A DNA stretch of 64,000 bases from Octopus sinensis (taxonomy: Eukaryota): the NCBI RefSeq assembly GCF_006345805.1, contig NW_021832721.1:1-64000 (forward strand), written 5' to 3'. The notes beneath the pieces were generated by a model, which had not been told where the DNA came from, did no database searches, and saw nothing but the letters and a program-made list of their open reading frames with translations. This document shows, one piece after another, positions 161-61,420 of this stretch (its first letter is position 1; every line of letters begins with the position of its first letter). The translations under genes were made by a program, and so were the position numbers.

Positions 161-232
161 AGAAATCTTAACCCGGGAATATCATCGAAAGTTCCTACTT
201 GAATTGTCTCGATATTATTTTCATTCAAATAT
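161..232 (-). CDS. LRR exon E1 (family A): [23 protein letters not shown](L)
   Basis: 72 nt, acceptor TTACAG, donor GTAAGT, open frame, phase 2/2. Confidence 0.93.

Positions 233-61420: not shown

What the first reader, a model, noticed from the sequence alone, without database searches (positions are those of the whole stretch)
161..61420. 61-kb library of 27 interchangeable single-LRR exons: candidate combinatorial (Dscam- or VLR-like) receptor locus in a cephalopod
Seen: 27 micro-exons hidden among TEs, 26 exactly 72 nt and stop-free, all with AG/GT, all phase 2/2, in five families with family-specific intron flanks. Transcript order is E C B B D C C C A B A B C C C D C C D C D C C B A B A. 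Any subset splices in frame. Established: 72-nt phase-2 LRR exons occur in LGR/glycoprotein-hormone receptors and Slit, but usually as old divergent repeats. Dynamic shuffling of one-LRR exons is described for brown-algal ROCO genes, and jawless-fish VLRs use variable LRR cassettes. Inference: recent duplication, a broken cassette, a deleted cassette and variable binding-face residues fit a diversifying recognition system (immunity, self-recognition or neural wiring) better than a fixed structural solenoid.
Basis: partly seen in the sequence, partly recalled or inferred. Interest (0 to 1): 0.93.

Follow-up and report, generated by a model that had tools for sequence, protein, structure and literature searches.

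The report
Octopus receptor gene's single-repeat exon array
The window holds 27 tiny exons, each coding one leucine-rich repeat, that form the middle of a very long ligand-binding domain in an octopus-expanded adhesion-GPCR family; the array is real and under selection, but nothing shows that the exons are mixed and matched like Dscam or lamprey VLR cassettes.

Summary
There are 27 LRR exons on the minus strand, 26 of exactly 72 nt and one of 71 nt with a frameshift. All have AG/GT and phase-2 introns, and the five families occur in the stated order. The window is only the first 64 kb of a 116-kb unplaced contig. That contig holds nothing but such exons (43 intact, 2 decayed) and has no first exon or post-LRR exons. 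Its 3' end is 88-89% identical, introns included, to a chromosomal gene with a signal-peptide/LRRNT exon upstream and a GPS exon downstream. Other paralogous arrays are followed on the same strand by LRRCT, Ly6/uPAR-like, GPS and 7tm_2 exons. This matches the octopus-specific LRR adhesion-GPCR expansion already reported. The array grew by tandem duplication of a roughly 250-300-bp exon-plus-short-intron unit, and transposons later inflated the introns. Scaffold residues are under purifying selection (dN/dS 0.19) and exposed residues are near neutral (0.8-1.0). Having 26 of 27 exons intact is far above neutral expectation. A VLR-like mechanism is contradicted. Dscam-like combinatorial splicing is untested, because no transcript evidence could be reached. 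Conserved intron flanks of about 170 nt per exon remain unexplained.

The parts
61349..61420 (-). LRR exon 1 of window (family E), 72 nt, [23 protein letters not shown]
53392..53463 (-). LRR exon (family C), 72 nt
52536..52607 (-). LRR exon (family B), 72 nt
50065..50136 (-). LRR exon (family B), 72 nt
47915..47986 (-). LRR exon (family D), 72 nt
43036..43107 (-). LRR exon (family C), 72 nt; its downstream flank is split by a SINE (rest of flank at 42565-42599)
40527..40598 (-). LRR exon (family C), 72 nt
35012..35083 (-). LRR exon (family C), 72 nt
27913..27984 (-). LRR exon (family A), 72 nt
26497..26568 (-). LRR exon (family B), 72 nt; followed by a 123-nt intron
26302..26373 (-). LRR exon (family A), 72 nt
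23031..23102 (-). LRR exon (family B), 72 nt
21332..21403 (-). LRR exon (family C), 72 nt; its upstream flank is displaced to 21618-21709 by an insertion
21157..21331 (-). 175-nt intron of ancestral type: the conserved downstream flank element directly abuts the conserved upstream flank element
21085..21156 (-). LRR exon (family C), 72 nt
18312..18383 (-). LRR exon (family C), 72 nt
16696..16767 (-). LRR exon (family D), 72 nt
14918..14989 (-). LRR exon (family C), 72 nt, [23 protein letters not shown]
12814..12885 (-). LRR exon (family C), 72 nt; followed by a 231-nt intron
12511..12582 (-). LRR exon (family D), 72 nt; followed by a 397-nt intron
12042..12113 (-). LRR exon (family C), 72 nt
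10136..10207 (-). LRR exon (family D), 72 nt
8490..8561 (-). LRR exon (family C), 72 nt
6904..6975 (-). LRR exon (family C), 72 nt (donor GTTAGT)
4965..5036 (-). LRR exon (family B), 72 nt
3575..3646 (-). LRR exon (family A), 72 nt; homologue at C27:18.2112 Mb is 94% identical
1993..2063 (-). Broken LRR exon (family B), 71 nt: a 1-nt deletion gives an in-frame TGA. AG and GTGAGT are kept. The homologue in the C27 paralog is an intact 72-nt exon.
161..232 (-). Last LRR exon before the contig end (family A), 72 nt; the paralog on C27 carries further LRR exons 3' of its homologue

Best explanation
The window is an internal piece of the LRR-ectodomain coding region of one member of an octopus-expanded family of adhesion GPCRs. 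The family architecture is signal peptide-LRRNT, n x LRR, LRRCT, Ly6/uPAR-like domain, HRM-like domain, GPS, 7tm_2. Each 24-residue LRR is one 72-nt exon bounded by phase-2 introns.

The array grew by unequal-crossover tandem duplication of a unit of about 250-300 bp, made of one exon plus an intron of roughly 175-230 nt. Insertions of SINEs, DNA elements and retroelements then stretched most introns to 1.3-7.9 kb.

The exons are spliced in genomic order into a long LRR solenoid. Its hydrophobic scaffold is conserved and its exposed residues drift or diversify. Because every exon is phase-symmetric, gain, loss or death of single exons keeps the frame. The frameshifted exon 1993-2063 must therefore be skipped or the transcript is lost.

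Shown: the anatomy, the family context, the duplication unit and the selection pattern. Inferred: attachment of this contig's array to GPS/7TM exons (they are off the contig), mostly constitutive splicing, and ligand-binding function.
For: 27 exons with the stated geometry.

The window is C9192:1-64000 of a 115,991-bp contig that carries 45 LRR-exon copies and nothing else. tblastn finds no SP/LRRNT exon and no post-LRR exons.

The closest annotated protein, P0013 (O. bimaculoides, 47% identity), is LRRs + LRRCT + a Cys-rich domain matching LYPD1 (E 0.003) + an HRM-like domain (E 4e-4).

In the window's own genome, LRR arrays are followed on the same strand by LRRCT/LU, GPS and 7tm_2 exons:
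- C27:17.989-18.071 Mb
- C9:13.682-13.590 Mb, which also has LRRNT
- C29:10.733-10.690 Mb, C9912, C13511 (no GPS hit listed there)
- C8:71.269-71.474 Mb, where no 7tm_2 hit was listed
.

Window 1-1043 and 1934-4171 are collinear and 88-89% identical, introns included, with C27:18210720-18214024. That gene has an SP/LRRNT exon at 18199224 and a GPS exon at 18231259, both on its coding strand.

The duplication unit is shown by the 175-nt intron 21157-21331, which equals the downstream flank plus the upstream flank. Short introns of 123, 175, 231 and 397 nt persist.

Selection: dN/dS is 0.19 at scaffold positions and 0.8-1.0 at exposed positions. Simulated neutral decay leaves 3-21 of 27 exons intact, with P(>=26) <= 0.015 even at d = 0.03.

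In the related O. bimaculoides gene, the model uses all 13 intact LRR exons in order and omits only one with broken splice sites.

An octopus-specific adhesion-GPCR expansion with LRR domains has been published (PMC6408891).
Against: - The contig contains no 5' or 3' gene parts, so the link to a 7TM rests on paralogy of only the last ~4 kb of the window.
- The remaining exons match their own contig best.
- No annotated or transcript-derived protein near-identical to this array was found between 132 and 2854 aa. Expression and exon order in mRNA are therefore unverified.
- 43 or more uninterrupted LRRs is far more than the 13-20 seen in typical family members, which leaves room for subset usage.
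- A similar giant array on C9 (first exon at 6,663,183; LRR exons down to 6,527,025) has no GPS exon detected nearby. Giant arrays may therefore belong to LRR-only products.
- The O. bimaculoides model is an automated prediction and is visibly truncated, since its N-terminus is translated intron.
Confidence: 0.62

Rival explanations
1. Regulated combinatorial exon choice (Dscam-like in outcome). Individual cells or tissues would include different subsets of the 40+ phase-symmetric LRR exons, producing many ectodomain isoforms from one gene for self/non-self, chemotactile or wiring recognition.
For: - All exons share the same length and phase, so every subset is in frame.
- The array is about three times longer than in typical family members.
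- About 170 nt of intron flanking every exon is conserved across exon families and across a paralog in another species, nearly as well as the exon itself (0.59-0.64 versus 0.65; background 0.33). From general knowledge, this is a hallmark of regulated alternative exons.
- Exposed residues evolve at dN/dS of about 1.
- LRR exon modularity enables alternative splicing in NLRP3 and in brown-algal ROCOs (PMC6642158, PMC11378527).
Against: - No transcript evidence is available at all.
- Donor sites are uniformly strong: GTAAGT in 41 of 42.
- The 5' and 3' intron elements are no more complementary than shuffled controls (-16.4 versus -16.7 kcal/mol).
- There is no conserved RNA structure.
- The flanks are explained more simply as the remains of an ancestral short intron that defines a micro-exon.
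- The only inspectable gene model in the family uses all intact exons.
Confidence: 0.13
2. The array is a decaying, non-functional segmental duplicate (a pseudogene fragment) sitting on an unplaced contig.
For: - One exon is frameshifted relative to its intact paralog.
- Two decayed exons lie at 66.5 and 67.1 kb.
- No gene start or end is present on the contig.
- No matching protein model was found.
- Against the C27 paralog, 12 of 13 exon differences are non-synonymous.
Against: - 26 of 27 exons keep their frame, AG and GT. Neutral simulation gives P(>=26 intact) <= 0.015 at d = 0.03 and about 0 at d >= 0.06, whereas divergence from the paralog is 11-12%.
- Scaffold codons show dN/dS of 0.19.
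Confidence: 0.12
3. The array belongs to an LRR-only or otherwise non-GPCR product (a secreted or GPI-anchored giant LRR protein), not to an adhesion GPCR.
For: - The C9 giant array, whose family-E exons resemble the upstream half of this contig (78-94% identity), has a signal-peptide/LRRNT exon but no GPS, LRRCT or 7tm_2 exon detected within reach.
- The contig itself lacks such exons.
Against: - The window's 3'-most exons and introns are 88-89% identical to a gene that has a GPS exon 4 kb after its last LRR exon.
- The genome searches score only the best candidates, so absence of a hit is weak evidence.
Confidence: 0.1
4. VLR-like somatic assembly. The cassettes would be donors copied into an incomplete germline receptor gene in somatic cells.
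For: Only the superficial resemblance of many LRR cassettes clustered at one locus.
Against: - All 27 cassettes (45 on the contig) have canonical AG/GT, sit on one strand and are exact 72-nt phase-2 modules. These are exons of a spliced gene.
- No LRRNT or LRRCT half-cassettes were found.
- From general knowledge, lamprey donor cassettes lack splice sites, lie in both orientations and overlap by short homologies.
Confidence: 0.01

Closest known systems
Octopus-specific adhesion-GPCR expansion ('group 3' of Ritschard et al. 2019, PMC6408891); distant vertebrate analogues are ADGRA2/ADGRA3 (GPR124/125), which have LRR-LRRCT-Ig-HRM-GAIN-7TM
   Same: LRR ectodomain upstream of GPS and 7tm_2 exons in clustered, lineage-expanded genes. 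The window's exons and intron flanks are homologous to those of such genes.
   Different: The paper reports LRR domains in only 5 of 22 sequences and does not describe the exon arrays. Here the array has at least 43 LRR exons over more than 116 kb, against about 4 LRRs in ADGRA2/3 (general knowledge). A Ly6/uPAR-like domain replaces the Ig domain. The 7TM part of this particular copy is not on the contig.
One-LRR-per-exon, 72-bp, phase-2 gene architecture of gonadotropin/LGR receptors and brown-algal ROCO genes (PMC11378527)
   Same: Identical exon length, identical intron phase and one LRR per exon. Growth is inferred to be by exon duplication.
   Different: Vertebrate receptors have 9-17 old, fixed exons. 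Here there are dozens, in families, with ongoing birth and death and with conserved intron flanks of about 170 nt per exon. Alternative splicing is documented for ROCOs but has not been examined here.
Dscam1 mutually exclusive exon clusters
   Same: Tandem arrays of like-sized, same-phase exons that encode variable parts of a surface-receptor ectodomain.
   Different: No docking/selector complementarity or conserved RNA structure was detected. LRR exons can be concatenated in any number, whereas Dscam picks exactly one per cluster. No transcript data are available.
Lamprey/hagfish VLR loci
   Same: Many LRR modules clustered in one region.
   Different: The modules here are bona fide exons with AG/GT, all on one strand, inside a spliced gene. 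The defining features of VLR were tested and not met.
Chaoptin / artichoke / Toll-like receptors (names attached to the best database hits)
   Same: Long runs of typical 24-residue LRRs at about 30% identity.
   Different: The similarity is generic LRR similarity. The 'toll-like receptor 5' name on P0013 is not backed by a TIR domain.

Membership tests
72-nt phase-2 one-LRR-per-exon architecture (gonadotropin receptor/LGR, ROCO type) | Each exon is 72 nt and encodes one 24-residue LRR | tested here: met
   26 of 27 exons are 72 nt and one is 71 nt
72-nt phase-2 one-LRR-per-exon architecture (gonadotropin receptor/LGR, ROCO type) | All introns are in phase 2 | tested here: met
   Every exon reads as 1 nt + 23 codons + 2 nt. 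The concatenation is open for 623 codons
72-nt phase-2 one-LRR-per-exon architecture (gonadotropin receptor/LGR, ROCO type) | LxxLxLxxNxL consensus with a conserved hydrophobic scaffold | tested here: met
   N9 in 26/26, F19 in 25/26, L1 in 25/26. Pfam LRR_8 is found in relatives
Adhesion GPCR (class B2) with LRR ectodomain, octopus expansion | 7tm_2 domain in the same gene | tested here: inconclusive
   Not on the contig. Present downstream on the same strand at paralogous arrays (C27:18071031, C13511:33652, C29:10689527, C9912:55760)
Adhesion GPCR (class B2) with LRR ectodomain, octopus expansion | GPS/GAIN autoproteolysis motif N-terminal to the 7TM region | tested here: inconclusive
   Not on the contig. 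The closest paralog (88-89% identical to window 1-4171) has a GPS exon at C27:18231259, and other arrays have one too
Adhesion GPCR (class B2) with LRR ectodomain, octopus expansion | Signal peptide + LRRNT first exon, and LRRCT after the array | tested here: inconclusive
   tblastn finds none on the 116-kb contig, and the contig is cut at both ends of the array. At least 70 such first exons exist in the genome, including C27:18199224
Adhesion GPCR (class B2) with LRR ectodomain, octopus expansion | LRR exons and intron flanks homologous to those of members that carry the other domains | tested here: met
Dscam-type mutually exclusive exon cluster | Tandem array of like-sized, same-phase variant exons | tested here: met
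Dscam-type mutually exclusive exon cluster | Docking/selector complementary intronic RNA elements | tested here: inconclusive
   The conserved 5' and 3' intron elements are no more complementary than shuffles, and no conserved structure is found. A unique docking site could lie off the contig
Dscam-type mutually exclusive exon cluster | Exactly one (or a regulated subset) of the exons in each mRNA | not testable with these tools
   No transcript or near-identical protein could be retrieved
VLR somatic LRR-cassette assembly | Donor cassettes lack splice sites and are copied into an incomplete germline gene | tested here: not met
   27 of 27 cassettes have AG and GT, and GTAAGT occurs in 41 of 42 donors
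VLR somatic LRR-cassette assembly | Cassettes lie in both orientations, with partial modules including LRRNT/LRRCT pieces | tested here: not met
   All 45 copies are on the minus strand and are whole 72-nt modules. No cap-like pieces were found
Toll-like receptor (name of the closest annotated protein) | TIR domain | tested here: not met
   Pfam finds only LRR families in P0013 and P0006

The most novel reading that the evidence does not exclude
Octopuses would use giant arrays of phase-symmetric single-LRR exons (at least 43 here, and a comparable 136-kb array on C9) as a splice-level repertoire. Family-wide conserved intron elements beside every exon would control which LRRs enter each adhesion-GPCR (or LRR-only) ectodomain. 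That would give cell- or tissue-specific recognition diversity, a third route beside Dscam and VLR.
Probability: 0.12. Interest if true: 0.85.

Novelty: new member of a known kind. Interest (0 to 1): 0.42.

Why it matters
The finding ties an eye-catching exon array to a concrete gene family: the octopus-specific LRR adhesion-GPCR expansion, reported to be expressed in axial nerve cord, suckers and skin (PMC6408891). It shows how such ectodomains grow, by duplication of an exon-plus-short-intron unit of about 0.3 kb, followed by transposon inflation of introns and death of single exons without loss of frame.

It also shows that current gene models cut these arrays arbitrarily, so family size and ectodomain length are under-described in cephalopod annotations. 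The length of the arrays and the conserved intron elements beside every exon make the question 'one giant solenoid or many isoforms?' directly testable with long-read cDNA.

If isoform diversity were found, it would be a new example of receptor diversification in a large-brained invertebrate. If not, this is an ordinary though extreme LRR gene.

Tried and rejected
- My first motif scans missed the exons because the LRR motif straddles exon borders. A frame-aware scan and an nhmmer profile fixed this.
- Three searches of the large protein collection found only generic LRR proteins. The queries were the 623-aa window protein, a 239-aa piece, and a padded 1631-aa query to reach proteins of 897-2854 aa. 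Hits were at about 30% identity, plus octopus paralogs at 47-57%. No model or transcript of this locus was found, so the test of exon usage failed.
I therefore relied on coordinates and on 3-kb loci returned by the genome search.
- No intron-end complementarity was found, and RNAalifold found no structure in the downstream element.
- The search for a 'deleted cassette' found only flanks split by SINEs.
- Pfam gave no hit for the Cys-rich domain. Only a weak PDB match to LYPD1 and a sub-threshold HRM match were obtained.
- No haplotig explanation holds for the window: no copy above 90% identity exists elsewhere in the assembly.
- dN/dS above 1 against the C27 paralog rests on 13 differences and is not significant.

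Full report
**Observation.** The exons are on the minus strand. A scan for AG-72 nt-GT units that are open when read as 1 nt + 23 codons + 2 nt, with LRR spacing, found 25 exons. A profile built from them (exon plus 25/15 nt of flank) found 27 copies in the window at E = 1e-20 to 1e-28.

The two additional copies are:
- 14918-14989, a normal 72-nt exon with Y in place of the I/L at LRR position 11.
- 1993-2063, which is 71 nt. A 1-nt deletion gives [20 protein letters not shown], with the acceptor AG and a GTGAGT donor retained.

All introns are phase 2, and the 26 intact exons concatenate into an open 623-codon LRR protein.

The window is bases 1-64000 of contig C9192, which is 115,991 bp long, in a 2.72-Gb assembly of 13,516 contigs.
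- The array runs to the far end of the contig. There are 45 profile hits, all on the minus strand. 42 are intact 72-nt exons, one is the 71-nt exon, and two (66469-66540 and 67146-67217) are decayed, with stops and lost splice sites.
- tblastn with the family's first exon (signal peptide + LRRNT) and with all post-LRR domains finds nothing on the contig.
- The '61-kb locus' is therefore an internal fragment of a larger array, cut by the contig end 160 bp after the last exon.

**What gene family it belongs to.**
- The concatenated protein hits generic LRR proteins at about 30% identity (named chaoptin, TLR, IGFALS). Its closest relatives are octopus proteins at 47-48% identity.
- The best of these, P0013 (O. 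bimaculoides, named 'toll-like receptor 5'), has no TIR domain.
- After its LRRs, P0013 carries an LRRCT-like cap, a Cys-rich domain that matches the Ly6/PLAUR protein LYPD1 (E 0.003), repeated SEA-like stretches (identified by eye only), and an HRM-like domain (E 4e-4, below Pfam's cut-off).
- In the window's own genome, exons for these post-LRR domains lie directly 3' of LRR arrays on the same strand. GPS exons follow them, and then the terminal 7tm_2 exon.
- Examples:
  - C27: LRR 17.989-18.008, LRRCT 18.018, LU 18.025, GPS 18.058, 7TM 18.071 Mb.
  - C9: LRRNT 13.682, LU 13.643, GPS 13.606, 7TM 13.591 Mb.
  - C29: 10.733 to 10.690 Mb.
  - C9912 and C13511 (no GPS hit was listed for C13511).
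  - C8: 71.269-71.474 Mb, where no 7tm_2 hit was listed.
- At least 70 signal-peptide/LRRNT first exons exist in the genome.
- This matches the octopus-specific adhesion-GPCR expansion reported by Ritschard et al. 2019. That paper found LRR domains in 5 of 22 members, and expression in axial nerve cord, suckers and skin (PMC6408891).

**Link of this contig to that family.**
- Window 1-1043 and 1934-4171, introns included, are collinear with C27:18210720-18214024 at 88-89% identity.
- That gene has its SP/LRRNT exon at 18199224, further LRR exons 3' of the homologue of exon 161-232, and a GPS exon at 18231259.
- Its homologue of the broken exon is an intact 72-nt exon ([23 protein letters not shown]). 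The window copy therefore carries a real lineage-specific 1-nt deletion, or an assembly error.
- The middle of the window matches its own contig best (74-86%) and other loci at 82% or less. It is neither a haplotig nor an assembly duplicate of a placed region.
- Attachment to a 7TM region is therefore inferred from paralogy. It is not shown.

**How the array was built.**
- The 'family-specific intron flanks' extend about 110-140 nt upstream and about 60-75 nt downstream of each exon.
- The 175-nt intron 21157-21331 consists of exactly the downstream element abutting the upstream element. Introns of 123, 231 and 397 nt also survive, while the median intron is 1.7 kb and the largest is 7.9 kb.
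- The duplication unit was therefore a 72-nt exon plus an intron of roughly 175-230 nt. Most introns were later inflated by insertions:
  - a 771-bp dispersed element at 3792-4564 with dozens of copies;
  - SINEs with target-site duplications;
  - a reverse-transcriptase fragment at 43779-44309.
- Duplicates inside the window are old (73-89% identity, dS about 0.35). Those at 64-116 kb form a higher-order repeat at 94-100% identity.

**Selection.**
- Nei-Gojobori counts over 20 nearest-neighbour pairs give dN/dS of 0.19 at the seven scaffold positions and 0.82 at exposed positions. Recent pairs give 1.0 at exposed positions.
- The most variable positions are x7 and x8 of LxxLxLxxN, as in LRR proteins generally.
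- Simulated neutral decay leaves 18-21 of 27 exons intact at d = 0.03 and 3-7 at d = 0.17. P(>=26 intact) is at most 0.015.
- Essentially every exon has therefore been kept translatable and spliceable by selection. This argues against a dead array, but it does not distinguish constitutive from alternative use.

**Tests of the combinatorial idea.**
- VLR-like assembly is contradicted. All cassettes have AG/GT, with GTAAGT in 41 of 42 donors. All lie on one strand and are exact modules, and no cap fragments are present.
- For Dscam-like control, the conserved 5' and 3' intron elements are no more complementary than shuffled controls (-16.4 versus -16.7 kcal/mol). The downstream element has no conserved structure (0 pairs).
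- In the O. bimaculoides locus of P0013, the annotated model joins all 13 intact LRR exons in genomic order and omits only a cassette with destroyed splice sites.
- That model is automated and truncated. Its N-terminus is translated intron, and seven more LRR exons upstream are assigned to the previous model.
- No protein or transcript near-identical to the window array could be found in three database searches. Records of the window's genome are withheld.
- Exon usage therefore remains untested.

**Unexplained feature.**
- The intron flanks are conserved across all five exon families. They are equally conserved between the window and the O. bimaculoides paralog.
- Mean pairwise identities are: exon 0.65, positions -20..-1 0.64, +31..+60 0.59-0.64, -110..-21 0.50, and random 40-mers 0.33.
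- Window-versus-window identity equals window-versus-other-species-paralog identity. Array-specific gene conversion is therefore an unlikely cause, and selection on about 170 nt of intron per exon is more likely.
- This could simply secure recognition of 72-nt exons within long introns, or it could reflect regulated splicing.
- Together with the unusual array length (at least 43 uncapped LRRs, against 13-20 in typical members), this is why I keep about 0.12 probability for a splice-level repertoire.

**Verdict.** The window is a real, selected and unusually long single-LRR exon array. It belongs to a known octopus-expanded LRR adhesion-GPCR family, or possibly to an LRR-only offshoot. It grew by tandem exon-intron duplication with exon birth and death. 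The Dscam/VLR reading is not supported by any evidence obtainable here. The VLR part is refuted, and the splicing part is open and directly testable.

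Noticed in passing
contig C9192 beyond the window: 64373-115520 (loci L017-L022): The array continues with 16 more intact LRR exons in a higher-order repeat of four exon types. Copies are 94-100% identical, and a 4-kb segment is duplicated at 100% identity (exons at 96499 and 100529). 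This is either a very recent duplication or an assembly artefact.
   Followed up: partly
C9192:66469-66540 and 67146-67217 (L017): Two decayed LRR exons with stop codons and lost splice sites. These are dead cassettes left inside the array.
   Followed up: partly
window, every exon flank; consensus downstream GTAAGTTGAATAAGTCTTTTTTATAGTATTTCATTGACGATATATTTCTAAAT: Intron elements beside each exon are conserved across exon families and in an O. bimaculoides paralog almost as well as the exons. They show no RNA structure and no mutual complementarity. Their function is unknown.
   Followed up: yes
window 3792-4564: A 771-bp dispersed repeat with dozens of copies at 79-89% identity on many chromosomes. 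Its first ~36 nt match both strands at copy ends, which suggests terminal inverted repeats (a non-autonomous DNA element). It is absent from the paralogous intron on C27.
   Followed up: partly
window 1-137, 42600-42860 and many other introns: SINE-like element (…GGTGCTGCAGCATGGCTACAGTCAAATGACTGAAACAA…) recurs in many introns. One copy splits the downstream flank of exon 43036 with a duplicated target site.
   Followed up: partly
window 31778-33652 (+): A 624-codon open frame with no Pfam match. It is N/S-rich, and its C-terminal end looks by eye like a GIY-YIG-type motif, so it is probably a Penelope-like or other retroelement remnant inside the 7-kb intron.
   Followed up: partly
window 43779-44309 (-), 59437-60021 (-), 38602-39201 (-), 62608-62988 (-): Transposon-derived frames. 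One is an RVT_1 reverse-transcriptase fragment (Pfam E 3e-8). By eye, the others look like a second RT-like frame, a gag-like zinc-knuckle frame and a mariner-like transposase fragment.
   Followed up: partly
window 1044-1933: An 890-bp stretch is present in the window but absent, with a seamless junction, from the 88-89% identical paralog at C27:18212987. This is an insertion in the window copy or a deletion in the paralog.
   Followed up: no
L053 (O. bimaculoides CM046629.1:10400675-10483064): Annotated gene models cut a continuous LRR array arbitrarily. P0013 starts with translated intron (MYWLC…LNSTLCSR). Seven upstream LRR exons belong to the previous model, and the next array starts 1.7 kb after the model's end. 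The name 'toll-like receptor 5' is unsupported, because there is no TIR domain.
   Followed up: yes
G000 C9:6,527,025-6,663,380 (minus strand): A chromosomal giant array. A signal-peptide/LRRNT first exon is followed by at least 136 kb of family-E-like LRR exons, and no GPS, LRRCT or 7tm_2 exon was detected nearby. It may encode an LRR-only product, or the assembly may be broken there. Contigs C10429 and C11063 carry related pieces.
   Followed up: partly
window 53700-54500 and 44900-45400: Long low-complexity tracts (purine-rich/GA-rich and A/T-C microsatellite-like runs) give spurious open frames of 150-300 codons on both strands.
   Followed up: no
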